Numbered from the stretch's first letter, positions 22,762 through 60,952 are shown. The stretch: DNA of 64,000 nt from Vitrella brassicaformis CCMP3155 (GCA_001179505.1 CDMY01000268.1:62001-126000); one strand, 5' to 3'. The notes: generated from the letters alone by a model not told the origin. Program-made: numbers and translations.

Positions 22762-22795
<34 letters not shown>

Positions 22796-24324: not shown

Positions 24325-24360
<36 letters not shown>

Positions 24361-24685: not shown

Positions 24686-24717
<32 letters not shown>

Positions 24718-24977: not shown

Positions 24978-25013
<36 letters not shown>

Positions 25014-37651: not shown

Positions 37652-40600
37652 TTAGAACACGACTCTCAGCACCTCCACTTCATCGGCCATGAAGTACGCA
37701 CTGCCCCCAAAGAAAGCACTGCCACGCCCATTCCTCACTCCCACATAGCCCTCAGGCACATCCCACCAGGGGATGCCCTGACAGCAGCTGCGAATGTCAT
37801 CAGCAGCAGCGCCACCCTCATAGCCCAACTCCAGCCACCCACCGCCCACCATCAGCAGTTTCGCCCCACGCACTGTCCCCTCCCGCCCGGCCACATACAC
37901 TGGCCAGTTGCCGCCTTCCATCTTGGTCGGCCCCTTGGCGAAGTGGCCGGCCAGCGAGAAATGCCACATATCACAGCGGTACTTCTTCTTGCCTTTTCGG
38001 TCGTCGGGCAGCCGGATACCGGCACTGATGAAGGCGCCGAAGACGTACTTGTCCTTGCGGATGATGAACACCAGACCGCTTGCATCGCCCACACACCGCA
38101 GCAGATCGCCATACGACGACCCGTCACTTGAGGCCCTGAATGAAGAAGACAGACACGCACACAGACACAGACACACACAGAGCACACACACAAAGTCAAA
38201 CGATGGACGATGTCAATGACAAGAGCAGGGTACCTGTAGATGAGTTTCAGTCTGCTCGCAGTTGTCGGTCTGAGGAACCGATAGAGTGCCGCCGACTGGA
38301 GGGCATCGAAGGTCGCACCCTCGATCACCTGCAGCGACAAACAACAGGACGTCGATGCGGCTCTCCCTCGCCATTGTGTGTATGACCTTGAGTGGGAGAA
38401 GTGACCGACCGTCGACACGAATTGCTTCCACTTCATCGGCCACGAAGTGCTCACTGCCCCCAAACAGAGCATCGCCATCCTCATCCCTCACCCCCACATA
38501 GCCCTCAGGCACACGATCGCTGTCGATGAGCTGACGGCAGCTGCGCATATCATCAGCAGCGCCACCCTTGTAGCCCAACATCAGGCGTCCCTCAATCCAC
38601 CGACCGATCCACAGCTTCGCCCCGCCCACTGCCCCCTCCCGCCCAGCCACCCACACTGACTTCCTGCCATCCAGCATCTTGGTCGGCTTCTCGAAGTGGC
38701 CGGCCAGCGAGAAATGCCACCCATCACAGAAGTGGACGTTCTCGCCTTTTGGGTCGTCGGGCACTTGAATGCCATCACTCATATAGACGCCGAAGACGTA
38801 CTTGTCCTCGCGGATGACCAAGACCAGGCCCTCCGTGTCGCCCACACACCGCAGCAGATCGCCATACTCTGCGCCGTCACGCGAAGCCCTGAGAACATCA
38901 GAGACGACAGAGAATGACACACAATTGATTGCAGTGTCTGTGATGTGGTTTGTGCGTCGCACCTGTACAGCAGAGTGAATTCACATTCGTCCAACATGGC
39001 GAGCGCCAAGACGGATCGGAGGGCCGCACACTCTGTCGAGCTCAGACTGCTGCCAACGATCACCTGCACACACAGAGAGGGAGGTCAGGGCAATTGTGAC
39101 GATGCTGCAATCACCCCATGGGCATTCTCACTTGTGGGTCGGGCGATTGGTCGTCCTCGTCTGTCGTGCTGCGACTCGAGAGAGCCGTGATGCCATCCGG
39201 CACACCGTCAGACACACTGACGATGCCATCACCATCCTGATGAAAGTAGACAGCGGAGATATACAAAAGGCGAATCGCCGCCCTGCTGTCTGTGTCTGTC
39301 TGACCTCTGGTATGTCACTCAGGCGATCGTCGGCAGTCATTGTGAACACAGACTTGACCGACGAACGGGACAGCACCTGCACACACAAACTCACAATGCC
39401 TCCCCGTCTGTGTGGGTGCCCATTTCATTGCTTTTCACTGACCACAGACGGCGGGCCCTCTCGGTGGCTGCGTGTGTTGCTCCTGTGGATCTTCGTTGGC
39501 GGCCTCTCATTGGTCAGTCGGCCCTCTAACGGAACAATCTGAACGACGTCACAGACAGCCGAAATAGGCTGCTTTGTTGAACACATGAGTGAGCTCTTTT
39601 AATTTGCTTACGTTCATGGTGTTTGATGGCTCTGATGTCTGCGACTGTGTGTCGAGCGGCCGACCGCTGGCAGCACCGTCGTCATCTGGTGGACAGGTGG
39701 TGGTCTGAAGCCAGCCAAGTCAAGAAACAAAGGCCTCAGTTGTCGCCGTGGTGTCAGGACTAGTGTGTTACCTGTCGACTGAGGTCGGTCGTCGGTCCGA
39801 TGAACCCGTCCGCCTCCCGACTTGCAGCAGCAGCGGCAGCTGGAGCTGCTGCCGACAGGTGGGTGAGGGGAATGGGTAGGGGATGTGGGTGGGGCGGATG
39901 CATTGGGAAAGGGGGATCGACAGCAGCTGCAGCGGCCGACACAGATGCCCCTTCTGCGGCCTGAAAGCAGCACCTGGTGGAGACTGCCTTGAGTGTGTAG
40001 TTCGCTTCTCCTCTCACCTGAATGTCATCCGATGTGTCAGGTCCGGGCATTCTGTTGACCCACTCCTGGACAGCCACGTGTAGCTCCTCCTCGCGCATCA
40101 GCTGCACACAAGGAGAATCACGATGCTCATGGGGCTTGCTGATCCGATGCACACGCACTATTCCATTTCCCTACCGCCATTCCATCGGTGTCGTCAGTGC
40201 CTGGTGCAGCAGCGGCAGGTGGCACAACAGAGGACGGCAAAGGACCCTGAGAAGGCAGACATGCATCGCCGAAAGGCGAATCTCTCACTGCGGGCACTCT
40301 GTTTGTCTACCTGCATATCGTTGATAACGTGAGCAAGCGATGGTGCCGGTGAGGCAGATGGCCCAGGAGGGTTCTGAAGAGATAGGGGCACGCAGACAAT
40401 GAGGGGTCGATGACTCGTCGATCTGTGTGACTGATTTGCTGTATCCTACCTGCTGACATCGCTTCCTGAAGTTTTTGATCCACGTGTCGCTCGCAGAGAA
40501 ATCACTGATGCCCAGCCGATTGGCAATCTCCATCGCCTTGGCTCGGATAGCCTTTGGGGGGACCTTCGTTAGGTCGTCATGGTTGGCCATCCACTGCCGC

Positions 40601-41444
40601 ATCTCGTCCTCAATCTGCTGGTACTTGGGCTGTCTGTTGCGCTTCTTAGTCGGGTCGACGATTCGCATGCCGGCCTCTCTCTGCTTCTTGAGCTTGGCCC
40701 GCCACTGCTTGAAGCGCTTGGGTGGGATGCCTTTCTCCTTGGCGAATTGGGGCATACTGATGGCCTCTTCGCTGTCCTTTCGCCTCTCAAACTCGTCCAC
40801 CAGCTGCAGCCGCTTGCCGATCGTCACCTCGCCCGTCCCACTGGCGGCTTCCTGGAAGCACACAAACAAGCCCATGATGGATGGCGGCAGACAAGGATAC
40901 GGCCTCTGATCGTTCTTGCCTGAGTAGCTGCGTCATCTGCCGTATCGTCGCCGTGACAGTCAGGCTGACAGGACACGAGTCTATGGCGATGTAATAGATT
41001 CGTCAATCAACGCTACCTGCGTTGAGTTGCCGACGTGATGCGATTGTCCGAGCGGATTCGCTGCACCGGTCTGAACAGTTGCAAAGACAAAGGGTCAACA
41101 CATTGGGTGCAGAAGTGATTGTGCTGTCGTATCCGCACCTGATGATGTGGGTCGTCATGATTCACTGCGGCGGTACCAGCACCACCACCGTGAGCAGCCT
41201 GTTAGAGAACGAGCAGAGCCTCACCGGCATTGATTGTGGATGCAGAAGCTCTGCTGCTGCACGCACCTGTGCCTGGTTGTCGTCATGATTGTGATGGTCC
41301 TCGGCCGATGTGATGGCCCACATCCCTAGCCACATCCAATCGGCCTACACACACGAAGCACAGACACAGACAAATGAATGAATCAAAGCGGTGACGTGCG
41401 GCGACACAGCACACTACCTGTGCGAAACTGTCCCATTCACTCAT
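37652..41444 (-). CDS. CENP-B/pogo-type double HTH + low-complexity linker + 2x TLDc protein (copy 1)
   Basis: HTH exon 40450-40851 reads VTIGKRLQLVDEF...QFAKEKGIPPKRFKQW...KKRNRQPKYQQIEDEMRQW...IRAKAMEIANRLGISDFSASDTWIKNFRKR. It is joined by in-frame phase-0 GT-AG introns through linker exons to two TLDc domains ending VLRVVF* at 37652. The start ATG 41444 (MSEWDSFAQ) is tentative. Confidence 0.8.
40450..40851 (-). other. CENP-B_N/BrkDBD-like HTH + HTH_Tnp_Tc5-like DNA-binding exon (copy 1)
   Basis: Motifs RQPKY..IE..M..W, I..KA..IA..LG...F.AS..W...F.KR are typical of Tc5/pogo/CENP-B DNA-binding domains. No DDE domain follows. Confidence 0.85.
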
Positions 41445-41759
41445 CAGAATGCCTCCCTTTTGCCGAAACGATGAATCACAGTCAGATCGCCGCAGCTCGC
41501 AAGAAGTCGAAGGGTAGAGGGCTGTTTGGTTGCTCAATGAACTCCCTAGCTGTGTGCTGTTGTGTTGGTTGCAGGTCTGTCCTCGCGCCTAGGGCAAGAC
41601 AAGATCTCCGCAGCGCCGAAGCAGCAGGGTCGTGGGAAGCGGTCGCACACACTGTCTACTGCTCAGGAAGAGACAACCGAGGCAAGCAACACAGAGCTTT
41701 CAATTCTGTGACTGGCTGCTGGCTGAGAGTAAATTGACAGGCCCGGCTTACTAACGGAG

Positions 41760-43088
41760 ATGGGTCTCTTACCACAGCGGTGCCGCTTAACGAGCGTCCT
41801 TCTCTCTGCGGCCGTTGCAGTGCTCGTCACTGTCATGTGGTCGTCCTTCGCCCGAGCACTGCCGCGGCTCAGTGCATCGTTTCCTCGCCACTCATGTGCC
41901 ATCGGCCCAGCAGTGCTTGCCGGCCACATCAGCAGCACCAACCAGCACCAGCCCAAACTATCTGCCGCATTCACTGAAGAGGACCGTCACGCCGATGGCG
42001 CCCAGAGGCCGGCCAGTGAGGTGAGAGCCATCGACCAGGTCGGCCGTGTGTGCGACGCCTACCTGCACGACAAGGGAGAGACCCCGCTGAGCCTCACGGT
42101 GGTTGCGGCCGCATACACCGTCCTGATGCCGTTGCTGTTGTCGGCGGCTGAGGGCACTGAGGGGTGTGAGGTGACTGTGGACGCCCACCCCATCGGCTTC
42201 TACAGAGTGGACGTCAGGGGCACTGAGAAACACAACCACAAGAACCGCATACACGTGGCCGTCACAGGTCAGTCAGTCGACGCCACTCGTGTGTGTGTGT
42301 GTGAGCCTCGTTGATTTGTCTGATGGGTGCAGGTCATTTGAAGGATGAGTTTGTGCACGAGCATCGCGAGAACTCGGCCTCGTTCAACGTGGGCGGCGGC
42401 TACACCAACTGATTCTACACGGCCAAGCTGCCAGGCGCCACAATGGGCGGCGCCTTCTTCCCGACTGCACACGCGGCCAATGGCGGCGCCAAGAGGTTCC
42501 TGCGCTGATTCCGTCGCGGCTTCACTGAGGACGGCAGCCACGAGAACATCGACCTGGGCATCGCTGAGCTGTCTGCCGTGATGGGGTTCTCATACGGCGG
42601 GGCGGCGGGTATGACTTCTACTACATGGAAAAGGACAAACTGCACCGCCTCGACAACTACGGTGAGTGAGCCAGCAACTGTGATGACCATTGATTGAGAC
42701 ATCTCGATGTCTCATTGCCGTCAGATGCGCTTCACACGGTGTCCAACCACACGAGAGGCTTCTCTGACAAAGGCCGCAGCACGGTGCAGTTCCCCATCGA
42801 CGACATGGCCCCCGACCTGGTCAGCCAACACACGGCCACACACACGAAAGTGACACACAGCAGTGTGTGGATGTCCCTCTCTGTATGTGTGTGTGGTGTC
42901 AGGATGGCCATCGTGTGCCGAGTGCCGAGGAGACTGCTTTGGTCAAGGAGCGGCTGCGTCAGGTGGCGCCCAGGAGCGCCGATATCTTCGAGAGCTTTGG
43001 GGGCGACTACGCCGCCATGACCAAGATGCCCATCGATGAGGGCTGCAGACACATCATAGCGGTGGTCGAGGAACGCCTCACCAAGTGA
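41760..43088 (+). pseudogene. Degenerate gene for an uncharacterised protein with N-terminal signal/anchor
   Basis: Four exons with GT-AG introns. Exon 2 has in-frame TGA at 42410-42412 and 42506-42508 and an apparent 1-nt frameshift near 42600 (GGGG..YDFYYMEKDKL resumes in another frame). It ends EERLTK* at 43088. Family not recognised. Confidence 0.6.
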
Positions 43089-43954
43089 GAAGGAAACACC
43101 GACCAATGACTCTCTGACACGCACACAGAATGAATGTGTGTGTGCAGGGTGCCAATGGAGTGGCTGACGCCCGACGGCAGCGTCCAGGCCGGCCGCCTGC
43201 CGACGACAGTGTCCATGTTCTAGCGGCCGCTACTCACACACATAGACACTGTTTTTTGTGAGACTCTCTTGACTCGTTTTTTCGATCTCGTCCGGTGGAT
43301 ACAGAAAAGCCCACTGCCTTCGGCCGTGGGCTTTTCATTCTGCGCGTATATGAGCTGCTGAGCTCGAGCGACACAGCAAGCTGAGAACGGCTGTCCGGCG
43401 GCCATGTTATGTACATATTTGCGAATTTTTCCAAGGGGATTTGAGGGCTTATAGAGGCCAGCAAAACATGCACGCAGAGTGACAAAATGACCTCCCGCAT
43501 GTCATTGAATGCAGCTGTCATTGAGTGCATGTGTATGGATGTCGATCACACATGTCCGTACAAAATAAAGCAATGGTGGGATACACAATCAGTCATTGAG
43601 TGTCTGATTCTGTGTCTCTCTCTTCACTGAGACATTCGCATGACTTTGTTCGACCAAAACAGACGAGAAACAGACAAAAAACTGTTGGCACAAAAGTTTG
43701 ATAGGCGACAACACACACAGACATTAATACATAGACACACACAGACCGACACACAGTCGACTGCCGCATGGATGAGTGAATGCACGTTCTGCCGGAAGTC
43801 GACGAATCAGTTGTATGGCGAACACGGCCGCTGCATACAACAAAGCAGGAATGTCCATCACACTCAACCTGCACAAACGCACACACACGCACACATGCAC
43901 ACACATGTTTGGAGACACCAACATCGACAAACGGGCGTGGTGATTCTCTTGGTC

Positions 43955-44426
43955 TTATTCACTGAGAACTGAGATGAGCCTCTGAGTTGACCAAGTCCGT
44001 AAAGCTCTTGACATTCTCGTGTGGGTGGGAAGCCGCACTCGGTGCTTGAGGCGGGTGGGGCAGCGCTGCGCGACACGCCAAAGCAGATGCTCCAGCAGAC
44101 GCATGCAGGCGTGCAGGGCACAGATGCCTCGTCCATGACGAAAGCTGCCCGCCCGCCGCCGCTGGAGGGCCGGTGGGCACACGGCAAGTGAGGTCGCCGA
44201 CCTTGATCATGGGCACTGCGTCCTCAGTCGCCGGGGCGCTTGCGACAGCTCGTTGGTCGAGGAAGTCGACAAAGCAGTCGTAGGCAAGAGGAGGCTGATG
44301 TCTGCAGCTGTTGCCGCACGAGCACCCTCGCGTCGTGTGCGGGGCAGGACGCCGTGTGGCTTGAGCTGCAGCAGCTTGACCAGGTCCGACACGACAGCAG
44401 ACGACTGCCCGTCACAGCCAACCTGC

Positions 44427-44460
<34 letters not shown>

Positions 44461-45239: not shown

Positions 45240-45414
45240 GGTGGCTTAGAATACACAGAGAACGCCTTAGAAGGATACCAACGCTCTTTATTGCTCCTGT
45301 CCTGCAGCTGCTTGCTGTAAATGCATGCGTCAGGGTGGGGGTGGGGGGCGCCTCTGCAAGCTCCGTCTCAAGTGGATGCTTTTCCGCCATCGCCTCTGAT
45401 GGATCTCTTCCATA

Positions 45415-46560: not shown

Positions 46561-47618
46561 GTTGTTCCGTCAGCGTGACGGCTGTGAGCTGATGGGAAGG
46601 GTCATCATTACGGGTGACGATGAGGACCCCGGCGTGGCCGGTATGCGCCTGGGCACACACACACAACACCCACGGCACACGATTGAATGTGTTGTGTGTG
46701 CGCCGTGTGTGTCTGTGTGTCAGTGTTCGGCTTCAGCGAGCTGCACTCGACCAAGCCCCCATTCCTCTCATTCAAGGCACCACCACCACCAGCAGCCCCA
46801 CCACAGCCGGCAACGGTCAATGTCGATGTCAATGTGACCATGACGCCATCTCCCGCTCCCTCCCCTGCTGCTGTGGCTGGTGCTGCGACAGTGGCTGGCC
46901 CGGCCCCCATCCAGCAGCAGCAGCAGCAGCACACGAGTGGAGAGGACAAGAGCTCGGTGGGGGACTCCCTTCTGATGACACCTGCTGCTGCCAAGACCGA
47001 TGAACATTCGCCCCCTGGGCCGCTCCGCCTCCCCGACAACGGGCGAGAGAGAGACCGGCCAGTGTCGACTATGATGCAGCCAACTGTACCTTTATCGTCA
47101 TCCCCTGTGCGCCAACAACGGCCGCTGCAGCTGTCAGCCAGCGATCTCTCTGTGCCGCTGTTCGGTCGACGTGGCCTCTTCTTGGAGACAGGGAGGGAGA
47201 GCTCATCGGGGGAGGTTGAGGGCTCCATATGGTATGAGGCGCGCTTCCGTGCTCGGGCCGACAGGATGCCCGGCCGTCGTCGGGCTATGTCGCTGCTCAC
47301 CTACCAAACCAAGACATCCAGAAGTTCCCGAAGTGAGCACTCACCCTCTACACACAAACACACACACACGGATGGTTACATTGTAGCATCTCTCCCCCTC
47401 TCTCTCTCTGTGTGTGCGATGTGTGTGCAGCGGTCCGGAGTGGGAGCCGCGTGACGGTGCTGCCGACGATCTTCGAGCGGGAGACTTCCGGCCGGGCGGA
47501 TGGCACTAGTGAGCCCGCGGCAGCACCACCAAGTGACGACACATGCGGCAATGGGGACGATACGCAGCAACAGCACAAAGCCGAAGACAGCACTGAGGTT
47601 TTCTTTGATGTCACATGA
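46561..47618 (+). CDS. Uncharacterised low-complexity (P/A/Q/S-rich) protein, paralog 1; 5' end undefined
   Basis: Exons RLFRQRDGCELMGR..., TKPPFLSFK...WYEARFRARADRMPGRRRAMSLLTYQTKTSRSSR and ...EDSTEVFFDVT*. The reading frame is conserved with the paralog at 53.4-54.7 kb. Confidence 0.6.
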
Positions 47619-48988
47619 TGGTGGATGGATGAGACGAGGGCTCTTTCTTGCGTGCATGGGTGGCGGATGAGCGTGTGTGGGTGTGGGTGAGTGGGTCAGG
47701 TGGTGCGGCTTATCCACGTCATTCACCCATGGTATGACGTGTCTGACGAGTCTTTTTGGATGCGGCCAGCCATTCATTCACCGGTCCAATGGATTGCTTC
47801 GATGAGTCACTTACTTGTGTGTCCTCAAACGTCCCCAGGTCACATCGGATGACTACGCATACACGGACACGGACACGCACACACACACACACACACACAC
47901 GTGTGCATAAAAAGCCATTTGGATGTCATCTGATGGACGTCTCTCTCACACCGTCTGTCTATCTGCCTGTCTGCCTGCACCTATGTGGCGTGGTGTGTCC
48001 GCATATCGGATGAGAGCCAAACGGCGGCTTGTATGGTTCATGCGCACGGCACATGGCCGGCCAGCAGACATAGACATCTCTAAAGCGTGTCGACTATCGC
48101 ACAGGGGATAAGGTAACAAAAGCAAAGCGACGCCGCTGTCATGATGAGTCAATCACGGAAATCGACACCATTCTAGCTTTGTGTGCTCACACCGCACACA
48201 GAACGAAAACGCTCCACGACAAAAAACCAATTGCTTCTCTCTGCCGGGCAGCTACATGCTCATCCAGGTCATCCATGGCATCTATGGAAAAATGCTGCCG
48301 TTGTTGTCTGCGCGTACGCGTCGCCATCACTTGTCACACACAAACACGCCCACACGACAAGAAAGTCACCAATCGTCTCTGCCGGCAGCTACAACCTGCC
48401 AACAGCACTGAAGCACTATACAACACCACACACAGACAGAGGGACAGGAAAGCCCACACTCAGCAATGATTTCGTGCAGAATAAAGGAAGGAAGAAAGAG
48501 GGCATTTGAGCCTCATACGAACGTGGAAGACACAATCAGACGAGACACGCTCGGGCAGGCTGTCAACTGACATTCACTCTACCGCACAAAGCAACCAGCT
48601 ACGGATCTCTGACACGGGCACACACACGACACATGGACACCGAAGCCGACCAGAGGTATGCCTCATGTTTCCCTCAGTCACGATATTGAAAAAGAGAAGC
48701 AAGATTCATGAAGACAATGGCGTGAATTGATCCGCTGCGATTGGCCCACTCGTCGTCAATCATTGTCAGTGGGTTCAGAAATTGAGGCACTCGCAAGTGC
48801 GTCGCATCAGTGAGAGAAAGTGTGGCCCCTACCGGCAGGAAGAGGCGGATGGCTCAAGCAGACCCACACCATGTGGCTGTCATATGATGGACGGCTGCTC
48901 TGCGGACACACCACACCACGAAGGGGAAAAAAGCATAAAGCTGGATAATAATAATAATAATAATAGTAAAAGCACCACACATTCATGC

Positions 48989-51900
48989 TCACACCAATGT
49001 CAGCACCTCCACTTCATCAGCCATAAACTCCTCACTGCCCCCAAAGAGAGCATAGCCATAGTCATTCCTCACCCCCACATAGCCATCAGGCACAACCCAG
49101 TTGAGGATGAGCTGACGGCAGCTGCGCACATCACCAGCAGCGCCACCCTCATAGCCCAAACACAGCCACACACCGATCCACAGCTTCGCCCCATCCACTG
49201 TCCCCTCCCGCCCGGCCACACACACTCTCCATTTGCCCTCCCACACCTTGGTCGGTCCCTTGGCGAAGTGGCCGGCCAGCGAGAAATACCAAACATCACA
49301 CTCGTAGCCGTTCTCGCCTCTCGGGTCGTCGGGCAGCCTGATGCCGGCACTGATGAAGGCACTGAAGACGTACTTGTCCCTTCGGATGACGAACACCAGG
49401 CCGGTCGCATCGCCCACACACCGAAAAAGGTCATCAAATGACGGCCCATCACGCGAAGCCCTGAGGAAGAGAGAAAGAGAAAGAACAGACACACACACGC
49501 GCGCGCAGACAGACAGATTAAAGTGATGGACGAAATCGATGGTACGGCAACCGCACCTGTAGATGAGCTTCAGTCTCCTCGCAGTTGTCGGTCCAACGAA
49601 GCGACAAAGTGCTGCCGACTGAAGGGCATCGAAAGTCGCACCCTCGATCACCTGCAGCGACAAACAACAGGACGTCGATGCCGCTCTCTCTCGCCAATGT
49701 GTGTATGACCTTGAGTGAGAGCAGTGACCGGCCGTGGACACGAATGACCTCCACCTCATCGGCCATGAAGTGCTCACTGCCCCCAAACAGAGCACCGCCA
49801 TCCTCATCCCTCACCCCCACATAGCCATCAGGCACATCATCGATGGGATCATCGCTGGAGATGAACTGACGGCAGCTGCGCATATCATCAGCAACGCCCC
49901 CCTCATCGCCCAACCAGAGCCCCACACCAAGCACACCGATCCACAGCTTCGCCCCACCCACTAATCCCCCCCGCTCGGCCACGAACACTGGCCATTTGCC
50001 TTCCCACAACTTGGTCGGTCCCTTGGCAAAGTGACCGCTCAGAGAAAAAAACCACACGTCACAGCCGTACGTGTTGTAGCCTCTTGCGTCGTCGGGCAGC
50101 TGCAGGCCACCGCTGATGAAGGCGCCGAAGACGTACTTGTCCCTGCGGATGACGAACACCAGGCCACTCGTGTCGCCCACACACCGCAGCAGATCGCCAT
50201 ACTCTGCGCCGTCACGCGAAGCTCTGAGAACATCAGAGGCGACAGAGAACGACACATGATTGATTGCAGTGTCTGTGATGTGGTTTGTGCGTCGCACCTG
50301 TACAGCAGAGTGAATTCACATTCGTCGAACATGGCGAGCGCCAAGACGGAGTGGAGGGCCGCACACTCAGCCTCACTCAGACTGCTGCCAGCGACCACCT
50401 GCACACACAGAGAGGGAGGTGAGGGCAATTGTGATGCTGCAATCACCCCATGGGCATTCTCTCTCTCACCTGAGGGTCGGGCGATTGGTTGTCCCCGTCT
50501 GTCGTGCTGCGACTTGAGAGAGCCGTAATGTCATCTGGCACACCGTCAGACACACTAATCGCATCACCATCGTCCTGACAGCAAGAATGACAACAAGTGA
50601 ATTGCGGCCCTGTTTGTCTGCGTCGCGTCAGTCTGACCTCTGCTATGTCACTGAGGCGATCGTCGGCGGTCATTGTGAATACAGACTTGACCGATGAACG
50701 GGACAGCACCTGCACACACAAACTCACAATGCCTCCCCGTCTGTGTGGGTGCCCATTTCACTGCTTTTCACTGACCACCGACGGCGGGCCTTCTCGGTGG
50801 CTGCGTGTATCAGTCCTGTGGATCTTGTTTGGCGGCCTCTCATTGGTCAGTCGACTCTCTGACGGCGCCATCTGAATGGCAAAATAGACGGGCAGAAGAA
50901 GCTGTCACGTACACAGATGGATGACCGGTCTTGTCTTACTTACGCTTATGGTGTTTCGGTCTGACGTCTGCGATTGCTCGTCGAGGGGCCGATTGCTGGC
51001 AGCAGCATCGTCGTCTGGTGGGCAGGTGGTGGTCTGCAGCCAGCCAAGTCCAGACAGACAAAAGGCCTCAGTTGCTGCTGTGGTGTCAGCGCGCTGAGTG
51101 CATTACCTGTCGGCTGACGCCAGGGATCGGTCCGATGAATCGATCCGCCTCCCGACTTGCAGCAGCAGCAGGAGCTGAGTGTGCTGCCGACTGGTGAGTG
51201 AGGGGCCTGGGTGGGGGATGGGGGTGGGGTGGCTGCATAGCCGACACAGGCGCCTCCTCTGGGGTCTGAAACGAAAAGCAGTCGGGAGAGTGCCTTAAGA
51301 GTGTCTAGTTGCGCCTCACCTCCTGGACAGCCGCGTCGAGCTCGTGCTCGCCCGGCGACTGCACACAAAGACAATCATGATGCTTCGGGACTCGGTCATC
51401 TGATGTACACGCACTCTTTCCCTTCTTACTGTCCTGGCATTGGTGCCGTCAGTGCCTCCTCCTGCTGCTGCTGCAGCGACAGGTGGCTCAGAAGACGGCA
51501 AAGGAATCTGAGGAGGCAGACATGAATCGTCAGAGGGCGAATCTCTCACTGCGGGCACTCTGTCTGTCTACCTGCATATCGTTCGTATCCTCAGCGAGAA
51601 ATGGTGCCGGTGACTCAGACGGCCCGGGAGGATCCTGAAGAGATAGGGGGCACGCAGACAATGAGAAATCGATGAACCCTGGATCTGTGAGAGTGATTTG
51701 CTGTCTGTCCCACCTGCTGGCACCGCTTCCTGAAGGCCTTAATCCACGAGTCGCTCGCCGAGAAGCCAGTGATGCCCAGCCGGATGGCAGTCGCGACCGC
51801 CTTGGTCCTGATGGCCTTCGGGGGGACCTTCGAGGGGTCCTCATGGCCGGCCATCCACTGCCGCATCTCGTCCTCGATCGGCTGGTACTTGGGCTGTCTG

Positions 51901-52910
51901 TTGCGCTTCTTGTTTGAGTCGATGACTTCTACGCCTGCCTCTCTCTGCTTCTTGATGTCAATGCACCACTGCTTAAATCTGGCAGGCGGGATGCCATTCT
52001 CCTTGGCGAACTGAGGCATCGAGATGGCCTCTCCGTCTCGCTGGCGCCTCTCAAACTCACTCACAAGCTGCAGCCGCTCGCCGATTGTCACCTCATCTGC
52101 ATTCTTTCTGCACGCCTGAATGTGAACACACAGACATGGCGGCGACGAGGAGTTGCACGTGTCGGAGAGTGGGTGGATCCTTCTACCTGGGAGTCTGATC
52201 GGTGGCCTGTTCGTCGTGATGTGTCCACAGACGTGGCACGACGACGTGATGATCTGCGCTGCAAAGTGCGGGGTGTGGGGTGATGCTAACAATACACATA
52301 CGAACACTGACAGATAGAGTTGCTGACAAAAGGAGAGTGCATACCTCAGCAGCGGAATGAGTGTGCCGGGTACGCGGCAATGGGTAGAGTGGTGGCCGGC
52401 CCGTCGTCGCCGCGTAGGTGACAACTGAAGACAACACAACCGACCAACGATGAGCTGCAACAGACTGATGATTATGTAGCTTACCGTCGAGCGAGTCCGT
52501 CGGGACTCCCAAACATACCCCCGCAGCCACATCGGCAGCGATCTGCTCGAGAAAAAATTGAGGCCACCCCGGTGGCGGCTGCAGATACACACACACGAGG
52601 ACCGACAGATGTGAGGCAGACAGAGAGCACCATAATGTGCACCTGGAGAGCAGCAGCCGTGTCACCACTCAGCCCAGCACCGAGGGCAGCCTGAGAAACA
52701 ATCGTCACACGCCAATCAAAGTGGTGCCATAAGAATCATTGCACCTTACCTGCGGCTCATCGCCGTCGTGATGCCCTTCCTCGACAGCCCTTGGCCCATC
52801 ACACTGGACAACCAAACGACAAGCAACACACAGAGAGATGATTAGGTGAAAGAGTGATGAGTGGCAAGACAACACGTCACCTGTGTGTGAAGGTTGCCAG
52901 GGTCGCTCAT
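48989..52910 (-). CDS. CENP-B/pogo-type double HTH + linker + 2x TLDc protein (copy 2)
   Basis: HTH exon 51714-52115 (VTIGERLQLVSEF...FSASDSWIKAFRKRCQQ). Phase-0 linker exons are homologous to copy 1, and two TLDc domains end EVLTLV* at 48989. The start 52910 (MSDPGNLHTQ) is tentative. Confidence 0.8.
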
Positions 52911-53310
52911 CGTTTGCGCTCTTTTCCTCGAAGCAATGGGATGCGATCGGCGGGAAGGTGGGAGGCTCAGCTCGCTGACGCCCGATGAAGCTGTGGGCGA
53001 TAGCGTGACTGTCTGTGGCTGTTGTCTTGCCTGCAGGCCTTCTCGTGCGAGCAGACGGCAAGATCTCCCCAATCTGTGTGGACTGGAAGCTTCTACGCGC
53101 TGCTTTGGCTGCGTGGCTGGCGGTGGTTGTTTGTGGGCCGAATGAAGGCGACAGAGAGGTAAGAGGAGGCGGCTGCTTCTCACCTGGTGTTCACTGTCGG
53201 TTAGGCTCGTGGCAGAGTTATGGGACGGTCGCACTGCCATTGGTTTGCCGTGAAGAATGCACCATGACGGTCTCACACACACAGATGACAGAGAGAGAGA
53301 AAGGGATGGG

Positions 53311-53341
<31 letters not shown>

Positions 53342-53354
53342 GGATGTATTGTAG

Positions 53355-54689
53355 ATGTGCGTGATCTGCCCAAGGCGACCGGCGCGCAAAGTCCCATCTC
53401 GCGACCGATCAGGTAAGTGAGTCCATCCATCCTTCCCTCCCTCTCTCTGTCTGTGTATGCAGGTTGTTCCGTCAGCGTGACGGCTGCGAATTGATGGGAC
53501 GAGTCAGCACCCCATTGCCGGCGTGGCCGGTAAGGACCCACTCCCCCTCCCACTAAGCCCCCATTTCTCTCCTTCAAGAGCCTCATCGCCCCGTCGCAGC
53601 CGCCAGCACAGTCATCACAGCAGCACACCGACAACGACAGCGGCAACACAACAACAGCAGAATCAGCACCAGCCCCACCACAGCCGCCACAGCCGGAAAC
53701 GGTCAATGTCGATGTCAATGTCACCATAACGCCCTCCCCGTCCCCTGCTGTCCCTGCTGCTGGTGGTGGTGGTGGTGACGGTGCAGATCCTTATCTCTGT
53801 GAAGACGTCCCAGCGGCAGCACCACCGCCACAGCACCCACAACACGCCCCTGCTGCAAGTGTGACAGCCACAGCAGCAGAGATTGGTGGGCTCGGTGACG
53901 ACGACACGGCATCGCTGACCGACAAGGCCGCCCCTGAGCCTGCCGTCGCTGTGGCTGCTGCAGCTGCTGCTGCGACAGTGGCTGGCCCGGCCCCTATCCA
54001 TCAGCAGCAGCAACAGACGAGTGGAGAGGACAAGAGCTCAGCGGGGGACTCCTTTCTGATGCCGCCTGCTGCTGCAAAGACCGATGACCATTCAGACGAT
54101 GACCATTCGTCCCCTGGGCCCCTCCACATCCCTGACAACGGGCGAGAAAGAGACCGGCCAGTGTCGACTATGATGCAGCCGACTGTACCGTTATCGTCAT
54201 CCCCAGTGCGCCAACAACGGCCACGGCAGCTGTCGGCCAGCGATCTCTCTGTGCCGTTGTTTGGTCGACGTGGCCCCTTGCTGGACGGAGGGAGAGAGAG
54301 CTCATCGGGGGAGGTGGAGGGCTCTTTATGGTATGAGGCACGATTCCGTGCTCGGGCCGACAGGATGCCCGGCCGCCGTCGGGCTATGTCGCTGTTTACC
54401 TACCAAACCAAGACATCAAGGAGCTCCCGAAGTGAGCCCTCACCCCCTACACACACATGGATGGTGATATCATCCCTCTATCTCTCCCTGTGTGTGTGCA
54501 GCGGTCCGGAGTGGCAGCCGCGTGACGGTGCTGCCGACGATCTTCGAGCGGGAGACTTCCGGCCGGGCGGATGGCACTAGTGAGCCCGCGGCAGCACCAC
54601 CCAGTGACGACACATGCGGCAATGGGGACGATACGCAGCAACAGCACAAAGCCGAAGACAGCAATGAGGTTTTCTTTGATGTCACATGA
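53355..54689 (+). CDS. Uncharacterised low-complexity protein, paralog 2; 5' end uncertain
   Basis: Homologous exons to 46561-47618, including WYEARFRARADRMPGRRRAMSLFTYQTK and terminal EDSNEVFFDVT*. A 49-nt intron at 53530-53578 is required to keep the frame. Confidence 0.6.
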
Positions 54690-55432
54690 TGCTTTGCTGG
54701 GTGGACTGCGTGTATGCATGGCAGAGCAGAGAGTCAGTCAGGTGGTGCGCTGTATCCATCCGTCCGTCCGTCTGTGCCGTCATTCACTCGTGGCATGACT
54801 GACATGTCTGGCGAGTGAGTATTTTTTGATGCAGCCAGCCAGCCATTCATTCAGTGGAAGGATTGTTTCCATGAGTGACTTACTTGTGTGTCCTTAAACG
54901 TCCCCGATGAACACATACACAGACGCACACACACACACACGCGTGTGTGCACAAAATGCCATTTGGCTCATCCAATGGACGCCTCTCTCACACCATCTGT
55001 CTGTCTGTCTGTCTGTCTGCCGTATGCGGACACACCACATCGCACCAAATCAATCAATAATGAATCTCTCTGTGTCGTCATTATTCATTCATCAGTGGCT
55101 TTGCCCTGCAGCGGCAGAAATATTTTTTGATGAAGCCCATGGACTCACAATGGACCACACCTGCGTGTCCTTGAAGTGTGGGCGTCCTTAAGTGGCCACA
55201 TGGGACGACTACACACACACACCAGCCATCTGTCTCTCATCTGATGGACGTCTCACCCACACACTGTCTGTCTGTCTGTCTGCTTTATCTGCGGACAGAC
55301 CACATCGCACCAATGACGTGGACACACCGAACACAGAGGGCCGAGAACAGAGAGGCCTCACAGCTGAATAAAGGCAATACGCAGACAGCCATCCGAGACC
55401 CCTCAAGTAATCTGACCTTTCGGGCCTCACAC

Positions 55433-58400
55433 TCACACCACAGTCAGCACCTCTATCTCGTCAGCCATGAAGTGCTCACTGCCCCCAAACACAGCATTGC
55501 CACGGTCATCCCTCACCCCCACATAGCCCTCAGGCACATACTGCCTGGGAATCGACTGACGGCAGCTGCGCATATCATCAGCAGTGCCATATCCCAAACA
55601 TAGGCACCCACCGATCCCATCTATCCTCAGCTTCCCCACTGTCCCCTCCCGCCCGGCCACATATACTAACCTCCTGTCATCCAGCATCTTGGTCGGCTTC
55701 TCGAAGTGGCCGCTCAGAGAGAAATCGTACACATAACAGGAGTAGTCGTTGTAGCCTTTTGGGTCGTGGGGCAGCTGGATGCCGGCACTCATATAGACGC
55801 CGAAGACGTACTTGTCCTTGCGGATGACGAACACCAGGCCCTTCGTGTCACCCACACACCTTAGGAAATCATCGAACGATGGCCCATCACGTGTGGCCCT
55901 GCACATAGAAAGGCGGGAGAGAGAGAGAGAGAGAGAGCGATGGACGATATCAATGGTCCAGGACAACCGCACCTGTAAATGAGTTTCAGTCTGTCCACAG
56001 CTGTCCGTCCGACGAAGCGATAGAGTGCCGCCGACTGGAGCGGATCAAAATCTGCACCCTCCATCACCTGCAACGACAAACAACAGGACGTCGATGCCGC
56101 TCTCTCTTGCTAATGTGTGTGTGACCTTGAGTGAGAGCAGTGAACGGCCGTCGACACAAATCACCTCCACTTCATCGGCCATGAAGTACTCACTGCCCCC
56201 AAACACAGCATCGCCATACTCGTCCCTCACCCCCACATAGCCATCAGGCACAAGACATCCGGCGATGGACTGACGGCAGCTGCGCATATCAATAACAGCG
56301 CCACCCTCACATCCCAACCTCAGCCCATCGATCTCCAGCTTTCCCCCCCAATTCACTGTCCCGTCTCGCCCCGCCACCCACACAAAGATGCCACCCCCCA
56401 TCTTTGTCGGTTCATTGAAGTGGCCGGCCAGTGAGAAATTCCTCACATGACAGCAGTATCCCTTCTCGCCTTTTGGGTCGTCGGGCAGCCGGATCCCGCC
56501 ACTGATGAAGGCGCCGAAGACGTACTTGTCCTTGCGGATGATGAACACCAGGCGGTTCGCATCGTCGACACACCGCAGCAAATCACCATACAGTGGCCCG
56601 TCACGCGAGGCCCTGTGAGTACGCGAAAAATGGAAGGGACCAAATGCTGCTAATTGGAGTCCTTGTGTGTGCTGTGTGTCGCACCTGTACAGCAGAGAGA
56701 ATTCACATTCGTCGAACACGGATGGGACGAAGAGGGAGCGGAGGGCTGCACACTCAGACTCACTCAGACTGCTGCCAACGACCATCTGCAAGCAACGAGA
56801 GAGGTGAAGAACTGGGCTGATTCATGCCAATGGAGATTCTCACTTGGGGATCATGCGACTGGTCATCCTCGTCTGTCGTGCTGCCAGTTGAGAGGGCCGT
56901 GGTGTCAGCCGCCGCACCGTCAGATATGCTTATGACGTCACCATCGTCCTGATACAAGTGAATGAGGATATACGAATGAATTGCGGCCCTCTTTGTCTTA
57001 GCTGCCTGTTGTCTGTCTGACCTCTGGTATGTCACTGAGGCGATCGTCGGCAGTCACTGTGAACACAGACTTGACCGACGACCGAGACCACACCTGCACA
57101 CACAAACTCACAATGCCTCCCCGTCTGTGTGGGTGTCCATTTGATTGCAGTCCACTCACCACAGACGGCGGCCCCTCTCGGTGGCTGCGATTCTCATCCT
57201 TGTGGATCTTGGCTGGCGGCCTCTCGTTGGTCAGTCGACTCTCTGACGGTACCATCTGCACGGCAACAGGGACAGATCAAACAAGGCGCTTGTTCGCCAG
57301 CACATGAGTGTGCCCTGTGGTTTGCCTACGCTCATGGTGTTTCTCCCTGATGTTTGCGATTGCTGGTCGAGCGGGATATCAGTGGATTGCTGGTGCTGCT
57401 CGCAGTTGCTGTTGTGGTCGAAGGTGACAATGGCGCACGGGAACCATCGGGCGTGTCCGGCGTGGGCGCCCTTGATGCAAGTGCCGTACATCCAGCCCTT
57501 GCTGCCGCGGCTGTCCGTGTGCGTCACAGACACTCGGTCACCGCAGCTCAGCAGCAGCAAGGCAGACTGACAGCCCTCCGGGTGAGAAGGGGGGTAAAAA
57601 TCTGAGCACACAACCAAACACACAACAACGTGTCGTGTGTGACATCCATCTTTGTGTGCAGCCAGCCGCACCTTCTGTGACGGTGCCGATGGCGGGTCTG
57701 GTCAGCTCGCACGGTGTCGGTGGCGCACTGTCGTCATGCTGTCCTGCGGGCTTGTGGCGGCTCGCAGGAAACGGGCTACGAAGACACACACACACACGCA
57801 CACACGTGTTGCTCAGGTGATGTCCGTACCTCTCGTTGGTCAATCGGCTCTCTGAGGGTGTCATCTGAACAACGTAAGGGACAATCAAATCAGCTACCGG
57901 TCCGCCAGATAGATGAGCACTGTTGGTTTGCTTACGCTCATAGTGTTTCGCCCCGAGTGCAGCGACTGCTGGTCCAGCGGTCGATCGCTGACAGCAGCAG
58001 CATCGTCGTCTGGTGGGTAGATGGCGGTCTGCAATCAACACAGCAGACACAAAGGCCATTTCTGCCGCAGCGTCAGCTCGGCGTCACTGACCGGTCCAAT
58101 GAAGCCATCCGCCAGCCGAAGTGCATCAGCAGCCGACTGGTGAGTGAGGGGCCTGGGTGGGGGATGGGGGTGGGGCGGAGGTATTGGGGAAGGGGGATGG
58201 GCACTGGCGGCAGCAGCTGCGGCAGGCACATGAGCCTCTTGTGTCGAGTACTGCGATTGCCGGTGCAGCGATCGATCACCGTCAGCGGCCGGTGGGATCT
58301 GCAGCCTATCGTTAGGACGACGGCCGATGAACCCATCTGCCACTCGCACCGCAGCGGACTCGTCAACCACTTGGCCCTGCAGGACAGCACAGGAGAAACA

Positions 58401-60952
58401 CACGTGCCGACAGAGCGCATCGTCTGACGTCCTACCTGCTGATCGCTGAGTCTTTCGCGGCTTGCTAGCGGTGCTGGGTCAGACTCAGTGCTCTGCGAGA
58501 AGAGAAACACACTACACTGGTTCAGCATGTGGGTGTGTTGGGCGCACCTGTCTGCTCAGTTTGTTCACGTTGGAAAGCTCCCCCTGTGTTGGCTGGTTGA
58601 TGAGGGGAACGGGCAGAGGGTGGGGGTGGGGCGGATGCACTGGGGAAGGGGAAGGGGCTGCTGGCGCAGTTGCTGCCGCAGCAGGCGCCTCTTCTGCGGC
58701 CTGAAAGAAGCACCAGATGGAGAGTGCCTTTAGTTCTGTTTTGTCTCTCACCGATGTGTGAGGTCCAGGTATGGCGTTGCTCCCAAAACGGACCCTTTCA
58801 CTGATGTCATTGGCAAGAAGACGCACCTGCGGGAGGCAGACAGGTGTGATCAGATACACATCAACCACACGTCAGACACACTTACGGTATCGCTCTGTGA
58901 CGCATCAGCATGAAGGGCATCCAGCTGGGGGGCCAGCAGCACAGCATCCTGATTGCCACAGACCATTCACATCCTCGCCCCTGCCTCTGCGTGCGTGTGG
59001 TTGTGTCAACGGCCAACCTCTTCTGGGATGACAGATCCCTCGTTGAGGCCTGCACGAACCGCGAGCAGGACGTCTTCAAGCGTCTGCTGGATGGACAGAC
59101 ACAAGCCATACACAAACAGGCGAGCTGCTCTCTTATCACAATACCTCTGGTGGATGCACGGCCGCCAGTGTGTCAGCTCCGCGCACTGCATGTATCCCTT
59201 CCTGGGCAGCCGGCTGGCCCACCGACTAAACGCAAAAGCATAGCACGCTCATGCCAGCGGCTTAGCGTCCGATGCACGCAGTGTTTGCCTACCGCCATCC
59301 CGTCGGTGCCATTGGTGCCTGCTGCAGCTGCAGCGGCAGCAGACTGGTGGGTGAGAGGAATGGGCATGTGCAGGTCCGGTTGGTGGGTAAGATGAAGGGG
59401 ATGCATCGGGGGATAGAAAGACGCTGCTGCCGCAGCCGACACAGATTGCCCGTCTTCGCGGCTCTGACAACCGCACAAAATATGTGTTCAGAACACAAGA
59501 AGACGAGTATGATGTGTCGATTTCTTGTCACCTGATCGGTTTGCTTCAACGCGCCTTGCGTGTCATCCGATGCGTCGGCTCCGCGCAGTGTGTGGATCCC
59601 TTCTTGCGGGAGAGCGTTGAAGTGTTGCTCGCCTATCATGCCGTCGGTGTCAATCGGGGGAGCGGGGAGGGCACTTGCGGCAGCGGCAGCAGCAGCGAGA
59701 GGCTGATCGGTCAAAGTAACACTCTGGACAACAGGCCAAGGCGACAGAGTGGCACTCGACCGTCAACTCATCCCCCGTCTGTGTGCTGTCTTTCCCACCT
59801 GGTTATATCTCTTCTTGACGCCACTGATCCACGTGTCGCTCGCCTTGAAGCCACTGATGCCCAGACGCCCGGCGATCTCCAGCGCCTCACGGCGAATGTG
59901 CTCCACGGGGATCCTGGTCGGGTCCTCATGGCCGGCCATCCACTGGCGCAGCTCGGCCTCGATCGGCTGATAGGGCGATTGTCTGATGCGCTTCTTTGCC
60001 TTGTCGATGGCGTCTTGTGCCTCGCTGCCGGCTGTCGAGCGAGAGCGCCAGTGCTTGAACTGGCTGAGAGTGATGCCCTTCTCGAGAGCGAAGGCCAGCT
60101 GGGTCAGCTTCTCTCCCTGTGCCCTCCGGCTGTCGAACTCGGCCAGCAGCGCCTCCCTCTCGCCGATCGCCACTTCCTTTGTCGATCTCTGTCGCCGCGG
60201 GGGCGGAAGGGATGACGCCCGCTGCCTCAGCGATCCCTCTGTTGGAAGAATGGGCGGAGGCGCACCAGCCATGAGTGGGTCGACGAAGGGGAGCTGGCCG
60301 TATGAGCAAGAAGGCTGCATTGAGAGGGGGACATTGGCCAGCGAGGGAAATGGGTAGCCGGCAGGAGGGAATGCTGCGAGGTGGTCCGGTGGGGGGAATG
60401 AAGGGGGAGCGGCGGGATGACCAAACGGCCATTGGGCTGCTGGTGGGTGAGTGTCCGGTAGTGGAAGTGAAAAATGATGGCTCGACGGCTGAAGGAAGCA
60501 GACAGAGACGTGACAAAAGGTGGAATGCAGTGAGGCACTCGCCCTCTGTCTCCTGCTCACCTGTGGCATTTCACGTCCATCGGTTTGCCCATCTGGCTGC
60601 AGCGATTCACTGACTGCCTCTCCTCTGCTGACGGCCGGAACACCTCGCTGGAGCAGATTGCCCTCACTCAGACCAGCTGCAAAGACAGCACACAAGGTGG
60701 TGGGTGGGTGTTCATTCTTTGTCTGCCCACCTGAGTCAGAATCATCGTGTGCAGGTGCGCCCTGCTGGTGCATCGGCGCTTGCTGCAGCGAAGAGAAAAG
60801 ACACTCAATGAAGCAGTCTGCTCACTGCTTGTCAGTGTGATGTGATTCACCACCTGGGCAGCGCTGCCATGAGTCACACGGTCAGCACCACCCAGTGCTT
60901 CACTCGGCCCACTCGGCTGCTGCTCGTCCGATGAGTAATGCTGATCTGCCAT
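55433..60952 (-). CDS. CENP-B/pogo-type double HTH + expanded linker + 2x TLDc protein (copy 3)
   Basis: ATG 60952 (MADQHYSSDEQQ). HTH lies within exon 59799-60488 (VAIGEREALLAEF...FKASDTWISGVKKRYNQ). The linker has internally duplicated exons, and two TLDc domains end EIEVLTVV* at 55433. Confidence 0.78.

What the first reader, a model, noticed from the sequence alone, without database searches (positions are those of the whole stretch)
37652..60952. Triplicated gene family fusing a transposase-derived (CENP-B/pogo) DNA-binding module to tandem TLDc domains
Seen: three minus-strand genes (37652-41444, 48989-52910, 55433-60952). In each, a CENP-B_N/Brk-like HTH plus a Tc5-type HTH is spliced in frame, through phase-0 exons, to two TLDc domains. 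No DDE catalytic domain and no terminal inverted repeats were found. Established: this HTH pair is the DNA-binding arm of pogo/Tigger transposases and of domesticated CENP-B/JRK. TLDc proteins (OXR1, NCOA7, TBC1D24, MEAK7, yeast Oxr1/Rtc5) bind and regulate V-ATPase and are linked to oxidative-stress resistance. Inference: a domesticated transposon DNA-binding module has captured a TLDc sensor, giving a candidate transcription or chromatin regulator. I do not know of a described HTH_Tnp_Tc5-TLDc architecture. The HTH frames are intact in all three diverged copies, which suggests selection.
Basis: partly seen in the sequence, partly recalled or inferred. Interest (0 to 1): 0.82.

Follow-up and report, generated by a model that had tools for sequence, protein, structure and literature searches.

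The report
Transposase DNA-binding domain fused to TLDc
The alga Vitrella brassicaformis carries a family of at least 19 intact genes, three of them here, that join a DNA-binding domain borrowed from a pogo/CENP-B-type transposon to two TLDc domains; the fusion is real and seen in RNA, is already in public protein databases without ever being described, and its function is untested.

Summary
Three minus-strand genes lie at the stated coordinates.

- **Public models:** genes 1 and 2 are Vitrella brassicaformis CCMP3155 proteins CEL98344.1/A0A0G4EME9 and CEL98349.1/A0A0G4EMF3. Gene 3 is my own model only.
- **Structure:** each gene runs through about 17-25 short exons. Nearly all introns are phase 0. 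The order is a two-HTH module, a low-complexity linker, then two TLDc domains.
- **Domains:** the HTH module is homologous to the CENP-B DNA-binding domain (1HLV, E 5e-8; top Foldseek hit). The TLDc fold is confirmed (pLDDT 93; the top 15 listed PDB hits are all TLDc).
- **Transposon features:** there is no DDE domain and no terminal inverted repeat.
- **RNA evidence:** a complete MMETSP transcript ORF covers HTH to TLDc2 in a paralogue. There is none for the window copies.
- **Selection:** HTH dN/dS is 0.18-0.61, with every CI below 1.

- It is not a triplication. At least 19 of 30 HTH modules genome-wide have TLDc downstream, inside a TLDc expansion of more than 146 exon matches.
- CENP-B_N and Brk Pfam models do not match the first HTH.
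- The architecture is already in UniProt under automatic names, though I found no paper on it.

This scan noted the same family on other DNA of this genome. The function, a DNA-tethered TLDc regulator, is inferred.

The parts
37652..41444 (-). Gene 1, HTH-linker-TLDc-TLDc (public model CEL98344.1 / A0A0G4EME9, 892 aa, 17 exons)
   Evidence: Exact mapping of P0035. Independent exon chain and ATG/TAA found by reading and by the gene finder. Pfam: TLD 69.9 bits in 2 stretches, HTH_Tnp_Tc5 32.8 bits.
40450..40851 (-). Gene 1 HTH exon: bipartite two-HTH DNA-binding module (134 aa, phase 0 at both ends)
   Evidence: PF03221 E 5.7e-9. Family profile against CENP-B 1HLV, E 4.9e-8. AF2 model with six helices, Foldseek top hit 1HLV.
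39132..40373 (-). Gene 1 linker: 7-8 short phase-0 exons, Pro/Ala/His-rich, with conserved short motifs
   Evidence: Linker dN/dS 0.29-0.53.
38387..39063 (-). Gene 1 TLDc domain 1 (exon a 38963-39063, exon b 38387-38888, phase-2 intron between them)
   Evidence: Pfam TLD. AF2 pLDDT 93; the top 15 listed Foldseek PDB hits (ranks 1-16) are all TLDc domains.
37652..38328 (-). Gene 1 TLDc domain 2 (exon a 38234-38328, exon b 37655-38135, stop 37652-37654)
   Evidence: Pfam TLD 29.6 bits; mapping.
48989..52910 (-). Gene 2, HTH-linker-TLDc-TLDc (public model CEL98349.1 / A0A0G4EMF3, 896 aa, 19 exons)
   Evidence: Exact mapping of P0034. Pfam: TLD 60.4 bits; HTH_Tnp_Tc5 16.7 bits, below the cut-off, but 75% identical to gene 1.
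51714..52115 (-). Gene 2 HTH exon
48989..50398 (-). Gene 2 tandem TLDc domains (exons 50298-50398, 49710-50223, 49557-49651, 48992-49460, then the stop)
55433..60952 (-). Gene 3, a longer and more diverged copy (my model only, about 1320 aa). The linker is expanded with duplicated exons. The start at 60952 is plausible but not verified.
   Evidence: The gene finder gives an open chain. Homology of exons to P0034, P0018 and P0033. No public protein was retrieved for it.
59799..60200 (-). Gene 3 HTH core (inside exon 59799-60488)
   Evidence: PF03221 23.3 bits; alignments A1 and A2.
55433..56785 (-). Gene 3 tandem TLDc domains (exons 56685-56785, 56126-56612, 55973-56067, 55436-55898, then the stop)
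   Evidence: Pfam TLD 28.3 and 22.5 bits.

Best explanation
These are three members of a Vitrella-specific multigene family of host-transposase fusion genes.

Shown:
- Each gene encodes one polypeptide. A bipartite HTH DNA-binding domain of the pogo/Tigger/CENP-B type has lost its DDE transposase core and its transposon ends. A long, exon-modular, low-complexity linker joins it to two diverged TLDc domains.
- The architecture probably arose once. TLDc-1 domains cluster with TLDc-1, and TLDc-2 mostly with TLDc-2.
- It then spread to at least 19 loci by DNA-level duplication, because the introns are retained.
- Later exchange between copies was patchy.
- The HTH is the most constrained part.

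Inferred:
- The HTH pair binds a specific DNA sequence. Its recognition helices are similar between copies, which suggests a shared motif.
- That binding tethers the two TLDc modules to chromatin, where they act as protein-interaction or effector modules. The model is the co-regulator type, as proposed for the nuclear roles of NCOA7 and OXR1.

My odds: real fused genes about 0.9; DNA binding by the HTH about 0.6; a transcription or chromatin regulator role about 0.35.
For: - Public models with PF03221 + PF07534 map exactly onto genes 1 and 2 with canonical splice sites.
- MMETSP Transcript_34816 (P0018, 711 aa, complete ORF) maps 100% over 12 GT-AG exons, from HTH to TLDc2, onto the paralogue at C260.
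- 19 of 30 HTH modules have TLDc exons within 6 kb downstream on the same strand. Only 3 have them upstream and 2 on the opposite strand.
- All nine modelled copies are open over 665-1323 codons.
- HTH dN/dS is 0.18-0.61, with all bootstrap CIs below 1.
- The HTH profile hits the CENP-B DNA-binding domain (1HLV, E 4.9e-8) and Abp1 (1IUF). Foldseek's top hit is 1HLV. Atlas neighbours are BrkDBD/CENP-B_N/ABP1_N + Tc5 clusters.
- The TLDc fold is confirmed.
- There is no DDE and no TIR.
- In the tree, TLDc-1 of HTH genes forms one group with 90/94 support.
Against: - There is no transcript evidence for the three window copies themselves. Both metagenome/transcript scans were blank, and the genome's own records are withheld there.
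- Gene 3 rests on my model only.
- No DNA-binding, localisation or partner data exist.
- Known TLDc proteins act on V-ATPase in the cytoplasm (PMC8608904, PMC11094088). A nuclear role is therefore not the default.
- The C-terminal halves of the TLDc domains evolve almost neutrally (omega about 0.74-0.82, CIs span 1). That fits relaxed or diversifying evolution better than a conserved regulator.
- The paralogue pairs used for dN/dS are not independent, and gene conversion is evident.
Confidence: 0.55

Rival explanations
1. A fast-evolving conflict or defence-type family. The HTH-linker cassette is an address label that brings interchangeable effector or recognition modules to DNA, perhaps foreign or transposon DNA. 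The modules are tandem TLDc here and a PARP-type domain elsewhere. The variable half of TLDc is the recognition surface, as B30.2 is in TRIM proteins.
For: - The TLDc expansion is very large: at least 146 exon matches and 427 candidates.
- Many RING-TLDc genes lie alongside. B-box-TLDc and BTB-TLDc clusters exist in other eukaryotes.
- The same HTH-linker cassette occurs in a PARP-catalytic protein and in MMETSP transcript P0041.
- Copies sit in tandem arrays with patchy conversion, and the middle of the TLDc exon is 30-35% diverged between near-identical flanks.
- TLDc C-terminal-half omega is about 0.8.
Against: - No window shows omega significantly above 1.
- The HTH recognition helices are conserved rather than diversified.
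- No link to infection or transposon control is known for any chromerid.
- Patchy divergence can come from gene conversion alone.
Confidence: 0.25
2. Ordinary cytoplasmic TLDc regulators of V-ATPase. The transposase-derived HTH no longer binds DNA and serves as a protein-interaction or dimerisation module.
For: All solved TLDc complexes are with V-ATPase (7UZG, 7U4T, 7FDE, 9NN1; PMC8608904, PMC9263379). The conserved SRDG and FG motifs are kept. Their match to the NCOA7 residues G815 and G845 is my reading, not an alignment.
Against: - The family TLDc profile matches no solved TLDc by sequence, and identity in the structural match is only 14-18%.
- More than 100 paralogues are hard to reconcile with one conserved partner.
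- The HTH keeps the basic inter-HTH linker and CENP-B-like helices under purifying selection.
Confidence: 0.08
3. Annotation artefact: separate HTH and TLDc genes, or decaying transposon remnants and pseudogenes, wrongly joined.
For: Some paralogues are annotated as HTH-only proteins (P0001 347 aa, P0002 265 aa). There is no RNA for the window copies.
Against: - A complete de novo transcript spans both parts in a paralogue.
- About 17 consecutive in-phase exons carry no stop in any of nine copies.
- The order and strand are conserved at 19 loci.
- dN/dS is below 1.
- There are no TIRs or DDE.
Confidence: 0.04

Closest known systems
CENP-B and other domesticated pogo/Tigger transposases (human CENP-B, JRK, TIGD1-7, POGK, POGZ; S. 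pombe Abp1/Cbh1/Cbh2)
   Same: The same bipartite N-terminal DNA-binding module, with two three-helix HTHs of which the second is HTH_Tnp_Tc5. Sequence and fold matches go to CENP-B 1-129 and Abp1. Repeated domestication of pogo-like transposases is documented (PMC4231638).
   Different: Those proteins keep the DDE-derived core and usually a dimerisation domain. Here only the HTH pair survives, on one exon, and it is fused to TLDc. PF04218 and PF09607 do not match the first HTH.
Host-transposase fusion genes formed by exon capture (bioRxiv 10.1101/2020.05.07.082677), and the Caenorhabditis F-box genes that captured a Tc1/mariner HTH (PMC12062965)
   Same: A transposase DNA-binding domain is spliced to host exons. 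In the F-box case a multicopy, fast-evolving host family captured the HTH. Phase-0 symmetric exons here fit exon shuffling.
   Different: The partner domain (tandem TLDc), the lineage (a chromerid alga) and the copy number (at least 19 loci) differ. Neither paper mentions TLD or Vitrella.
TLDc proteins OXR1, NCOA7, TBC1D24/Skywalker, mEAK7/TLDC1, TLDC2, yeast Oxr1p/Rtc5p
   Same: The same fold: the top 15 listed PDB matches are all TLDc, probability 1.0, TM 0.44-0.57 by the model and up to 0.66 by the target. Pfam TLD scores are above the cut-off.
   Different: Identity is 14-18%. No solved TLDc is found by the family's sequence profile. The domain is in tandem, follows a DNA-binding module, and belongs to an expansion of more than 100 copies.
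RING-TLDc, B-box-TLDc and BTB-TLDc proteins (Vitrella paralogues P0014-P0016 and others; Atlas clusters from Cnidaria, rotifers and diatoms)
   Same: TLDc is the C-terminal module of a multi-architecture family. The Vitrella RING-TLDc genes lie head to head with the HTH-TLDc genes in this window.
   Different: The N-terminal module is an E3-ligase or BTB type, there is one TLDc domain, and the domains fall in different TLDc clades.

Membership tests
pogo/CENP-B-type bipartite DNA-binding domain | Second HTH matches HTH_Tnp_Tc5 (PF03221) | tested here: met
   12 of 14 family modules match, best E 5.7e-10. Gene 1 scores 36.3 bits and gene 3 23.3 bits. Gene 2 scores 19.3 or 16.7 bits, below the cut-off of 22.2.
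pogo/CENP-B-type bipartite DNA-binding domain | First HTH matches CENP-B_N (PF04218), BrkDBD (PF09607) or HTH_psq (PF05225) | tested here: not met
   There is no PF04218 match anywhere in the genome. At E up to 10 only generic HTH_Tnp_1, HTH_28 and HTH_23 hits appear, all below cut-off. Weaker support for a first HTH of this kind exists: the 1HLV alignment starts at CENP-B residue 27, the model has three helices at 11-59, and Atlas neighbours carry BrkDBD/CENP-B_N/ABP1_N.
pogo/CENP-B-type bipartite DNA-binding domain | Homology and fold of the whole module to a solved CENP-B-type DNA-binding domain | tested here: met
   Profile A2 against 1HLV_A, E 4.9e-8, and 1IUF_A, E 4.6e-4. Foldseek's top hit is 1HLV_A, E 5.2e-4, probability 1.0; TM is only 0.41 because the two lobes are flexible.
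Autonomous or non-autonomous pogo/Tigger transposon | DDE_1 transposase core and terminal inverted repeats | tested here: not met
   There is no DDE_1 in the proteins. The genome has one DDE_1 match, at C458. No TIRs flank the genes. The genes carry 16 to about 25 spliceosomal introns.
TLDc domain family (PF07534) | Pfam TLD match above the gathering score | tested here: met
   P0035 scores 69.9 bits and P0034 60.4 bits, with two stretches each. Gene 3 exons score 28.3 and 22.5 bits.
TLDc domain family (PF07534) | TLDc fold | tested here: met
   AF2 model: pLDDT 93.1, pTM 0.89. Foldseek ranks 1-16 (15 entries listed) are all TLDc structures: NCOA7, OXR2 4ACJ, Skywalker, mEAK7, Oxr1p and Rtc5p.
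TLDc domain family (PF07534) | Binding to V-ATPase, the function shown for all five mammalian and both yeast members | not testable with these tools
   The property is known from PMC8608904 and PMC11094088. Here the SRDG and FG motifs are conserved, but the family profile finds no solved TLDc by sequence.
Host-transposase fusion gene | One mRNA and one reading frame from the transposase-derived domain to the host domain | tested here: met
   Met for a paralogue by a complete MMETSP transcript. For genes 1 and 2 it is met only at the level of public gene models and intact exon chains. For gene 3 it rests on my model only.

The most novel reading that the evidence does not exclude
Vitrella has built a DNA-addressed effector system. 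One conserved HTH-linker cassette serves as an address label that is exon-shuffled onto exchangeable C-terminal modules: tandem TLDc, a PARP-type ADP-ribosyltransferase, and possibly others. This would imply that TLDc has a nuclear, V-ATPase-independent activity on chromatin or nucleic acids, possibly in genome defence.
Probability: 0.15. Interest if true: 0.75.

Novelty: new variant of a known kind. Interest (0 to 1): 0.45.

Why it matters
The molecular activity of TLDc domains is still unclear beyond V-ATPase binding. A large family that couples TLDc to a sequence-specific DNA-binding module would offer a natural test of whether TLDc also works in the nucleus.

It is also a clear protist example of transposase-domain capture by exon shuffling into a multicopy gene family. 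That process has been documented mainly in vertebrates and nematodes.

The limits are plain. It concerns one little-studied alga, the proteins are already deposited under automatic names, and no function has been shown.

Tried and rejected
Relatives outside Vitrella were therefore sought only by word search and the Atlas, and absence elsewhere is not shown.
- The look-up of encoding contigs found nothing, because the genome's own records are left out.
- Two scans of metagenome contigs were blank: the HTH alignment, and a degenerate HTH|next-exon junction pattern for genes 1 and 2. This says nothing about expression.
- The TLDc family profile against PDB sequences gave no true hit, even at E 10. 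The fold search was needed instead.
- An SH3-like look of one gene 3 exon (57330-57601) was not supported by Pfam.
- ORFs between the genes gave no Pfam hits. My gene finder over-chains there and was not used.
- A first impression that introns are more conserved than exons was rejected with proper alignments. Over all pairs introns are more diverged, and the g1-g2 pattern is patchy conversion.
- Positive selection in TLDc was not established.
- The lone DDE_1 locus shows only a weak Tc5-like remnant upstream (hhalign probability 22%), so it is not a demonstrable source element.
- My own joined exon model of gene 3 was not sent to any search tool. Exons were searched apart by reference, and exons were joined only inside scripts for frame checks and dN/dS.
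Full report
**Source and setting**

The window is contig C268:62001-126000 of a 72.7 Mb assembly in 1064 contigs. Word searches return only Vitrella brassicaformis CCMP3155 proteins as near-identical hits. GC is about 57% and introns are short, with a median of 68 nt.

**The observation**

Pfam scans of stop-to-stop frames on the minus strand found HTH_Tnp_Tc5 once and TLD twice in each of the three stated intervals.

Reading gene 1 base by base gave 17-18 exons from an ATG at 41444 to a TAA at 37652. The acceptors are YAG and the donors GTRAG, with one GC donor. The chain has no in-frame stop.

Two public proteins returned by the word search map residue for residue onto the same exons:
- P0035 = CEL98344.1 / A0A0G4EME9, 892 aa, on gene 1.
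- P0034 = CEL98349.1 / A0A0G4EMF3, 896 aa, on gene 2.

Intron phases follow a clear pattern. Every intron from the HTH exon to the first TLDc is phase 0. Each TLDc is built from exon a (phase 0 to 2) and exon b (phase 2 to 0), so the whole domain is a symmetric 0-0 unit.

For gene 3 I retrieved no public model. A small gene finder, trained on 127 family introns and on family codon usage, reproduced gene 1. For gene 3 it gave one open chain from 60940 to 55437, about 1320 aa, with an expanded linker made of duplicated exons. Parts of that linker are homologous to the 1191-aa paralogue P0033. I did not send my joined gene 3 model to any search tool. Its exons were searched apart by reference.

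**The DNA-binding module**

The conserved core is about 127-134 aa on a single exon.
- Twelve of 14 family modules match PF03221.
- A profile of the family hits the crystal structure sequence of human CENP-B(1-129) at E 4.9e-8, aligned to residues 27-129. It hits S. pombe Abp1 at E 4.6e-4.
- The AF2 model (pLDDT 74) has two three-helix bundles. Its best PDB match is the same CENP-B/DNA complex, E 5.2e-4, probability 1.0.
- Atlas neighbours are short proteins carrying BrkDBD, CENP-B_N or HTH_ABP1_N together with HTH_Tnp_Tc5.
- The Pfam models CENP-B_N and BrkDBD themselves do not match the first HTH.

**Transposon features are absent**

No DDE_1 is found in the proteins. The genome has a single DDE_1 match, on contig C458, with at most a faint Tc5-like remnant upstream. 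No terminal inverted repeats flank the genes.

**The TLDc domains**

Whole-protein Pfam scores are 60-70 bits over two stretches. The family is nevertheless very diverged, and its profile finds no solved TLDc by sequence.

The AF2 model of gene 1 TLDc-1 is confident (pLDDT 93, pTM 0.89). Its top 15 listed PDB matches (ranks 1-16) are all TLDc structures: NCOA7, OXR2, Skywalker/TBC1D24, mEAK7, Oxr1p and Rtc5p. Sequence identity in these matches is 14-18%.

**One transcript?**

P0018 is a TransDecoder 'complete' ORF from MMETSP Transcript_34816, 711 aa. It maps at 100% identity over all residues as 12 GT-AG exons onto the paralogue at C260:59000-64500, and it runs from the HTH exon to the second TLDc. 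This is RNA-level proof of the fusion for a family member that is about 50% identical to the window copies in the HTH.

I found no transcript for the three window genes. The collections that might hold them leave out this genome, and two scans were blank.

**Size and origin of the family**

The HTH module occurs about 30 times in the genome. The window's TLDc exon finds at least 146 matches among 427 candidates, on 50 contigs.

Of the 30 HTH modules:
- 19 have one to four TLDc exons within 6 kb downstream on the same strand;
- 3 have them upstream;
- 2 have them on the opposite strand.

Six of these loci are on this contig alone. Public models with both Pfam domains exist for at least eight loci.

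In a maximum-likelihood tree of 52 TLDc domains, the first domains of the HTH genes form one group (90/94 support). The second domains mostly group together, apart from RING-TLDc and TLDc-only proteins. This fits a single origin of the HTH-TLDc-TLDc arrangement, followed by duplication of whole genes.

The HTH-linker cassette is also shared with a PARP-catalytic-domain protein (CEM01961.1) and with a 909-aa MMETSP transcript. The cassette is therefore promiscuous, and the direction of 'capture' is open.

**Selection**

All nine modelled copies are open throughout.

| Region | Pairwise NG86 dN/dS | Note |
|---|---|---|
| HTH | 0.18-0.61 | every bootstrap CI below 1 |
| Linker | 0.29-0.53 | |
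| TLDc (whole domains) | 0.34-0.80 | |
| TLDc N-terminal halves | median about 0.5-0.57 | |
| TLDc C-terminal halves | median about 0.74-0.82 | CIs span 1 |

The C-terminal halves are thus relaxed or partly diversifying, but positive selection is not shown.

Divergence between genes 1 and 2 is patchy. Four introns differ by 1-5% and two by 39-42%. TLDc exon b has near-identical ends around a middle that is 30-35% diverged. I read this as short-tract gene conversion among paralogues. It also means that the pairwise estimates are not independent.

**Mechanism**

Shown: these are intact fused genes with a CENP-B-type DNA-binding domain under constraint and two TLDc folds.

Inferred: the HTH pair binds DNA sequence-specifically. 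Its recognition helices are similar across copies, which suggests a common motif. The binding would tether the TLDc modules to chromatin as interaction or effector modules.

The main rival is a conflict-type family, in which the HTH-linker addresses exchangeable effectors and the variable half of TLDc recognises targets. The established TLDc function, V-ATPase regulation (PMC8608904, PMC11094088, PMC9263379), cannot be excluded. It fits poorly with more than 100 paralogues and with the constrained HTH.

**Novelty**

I found no paper that combines TLDc with Vitrella or with CENP-B/transposase, and none in a screen of TE-domain fusions. No Atlas cluster has this architecture.

The proteins are, however, public, under automatic names such as 'Oxidation resistance protein 1' and 'HTH CENPB-type domain-containing protein'. 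Transposase-HTH capture into host genes, including multicopy families, is a known process (10.1101/2020.05.07.082677; PMC12062965; PMC4231638).

I therefore class it as a new variant of a known kind, of moderate interest. Earlier notes of this scan reported the same family on other pieces of this genome. I treated them as leads and checked what I used.

Noticed in passing
window 39377-39442 (gene 1 intron between linker exons L5 and L6); homologous introns in genes 2 and 3 and in L006, L007, L016: This 66-nt intron is conserved in 7 of 9 paralogues. Its mean pairwise difference is 0.28, against 0.36-0.44 for the other introns. It is open in frame in three copies and carries a TGA in three others. 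It may be a structural or regulatory intron element, or a facultative exon. It remains unexplained.
   Followed up: partly
window 1-651, about 1439-2890, and 61211-62661 (+ strand): RING-TLDc genes. The first is the C-terminus of public protein P0015 (301 aa, RING + TLDc). The last lies head to head with gene 3. Vitrella has many such RING-TLDc proteins (P0014-P0016, P0019, P0021, P0022, P0028, P0030, P0031).
   Followed up: partly
P0040 (CEM01961.1), P0041 (MMETSP Transcript_23096), P0036; locus L024 (C22:206000-208437): The same HTH-linker cassette, sometimes with two HTH modules in tandem, is joined to a protein annotated as PARP catalytic domain-containing. Linker exons L4-L6 of the window genes match its N-terminus at 45-50% identity.
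   Followed up: partly
window 46867-47988 and 53954-55029: An 80% identical duplicated segment lies upstream of genes 2 and 3. Its ORFs have no Pfam match. The duplication unit is therefore larger than the gene.
   Followed up: partly
window 21793-25813 (+ strand): Long ORFs with fibronectin type III repeats (fn3 113.8 bits), probably one large multi-exon gene.
   Followed up: no
G000:C458:4113-4667 (-), locus L025: This is the only DDE_1 (pogo-type transposase core) match in the whole genome: a 185-aa ORF with a faint Tc5-like stretch in the ORF upstream. It is probably a decayed pogo-like element.
   Followed up: partly
window 6805-7104, 15274-15573, 16958-17257, 23255-23554: Four runs of exactly 300 N (assembly gaps or withheld stretches).
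   Followed up: no
window 57330-57601 (-), inside gene 3: The gene finder places an extra exon here with a GW..P motif that looks SH3-like by eye. Pfam gives no match.
   Followed up: partly
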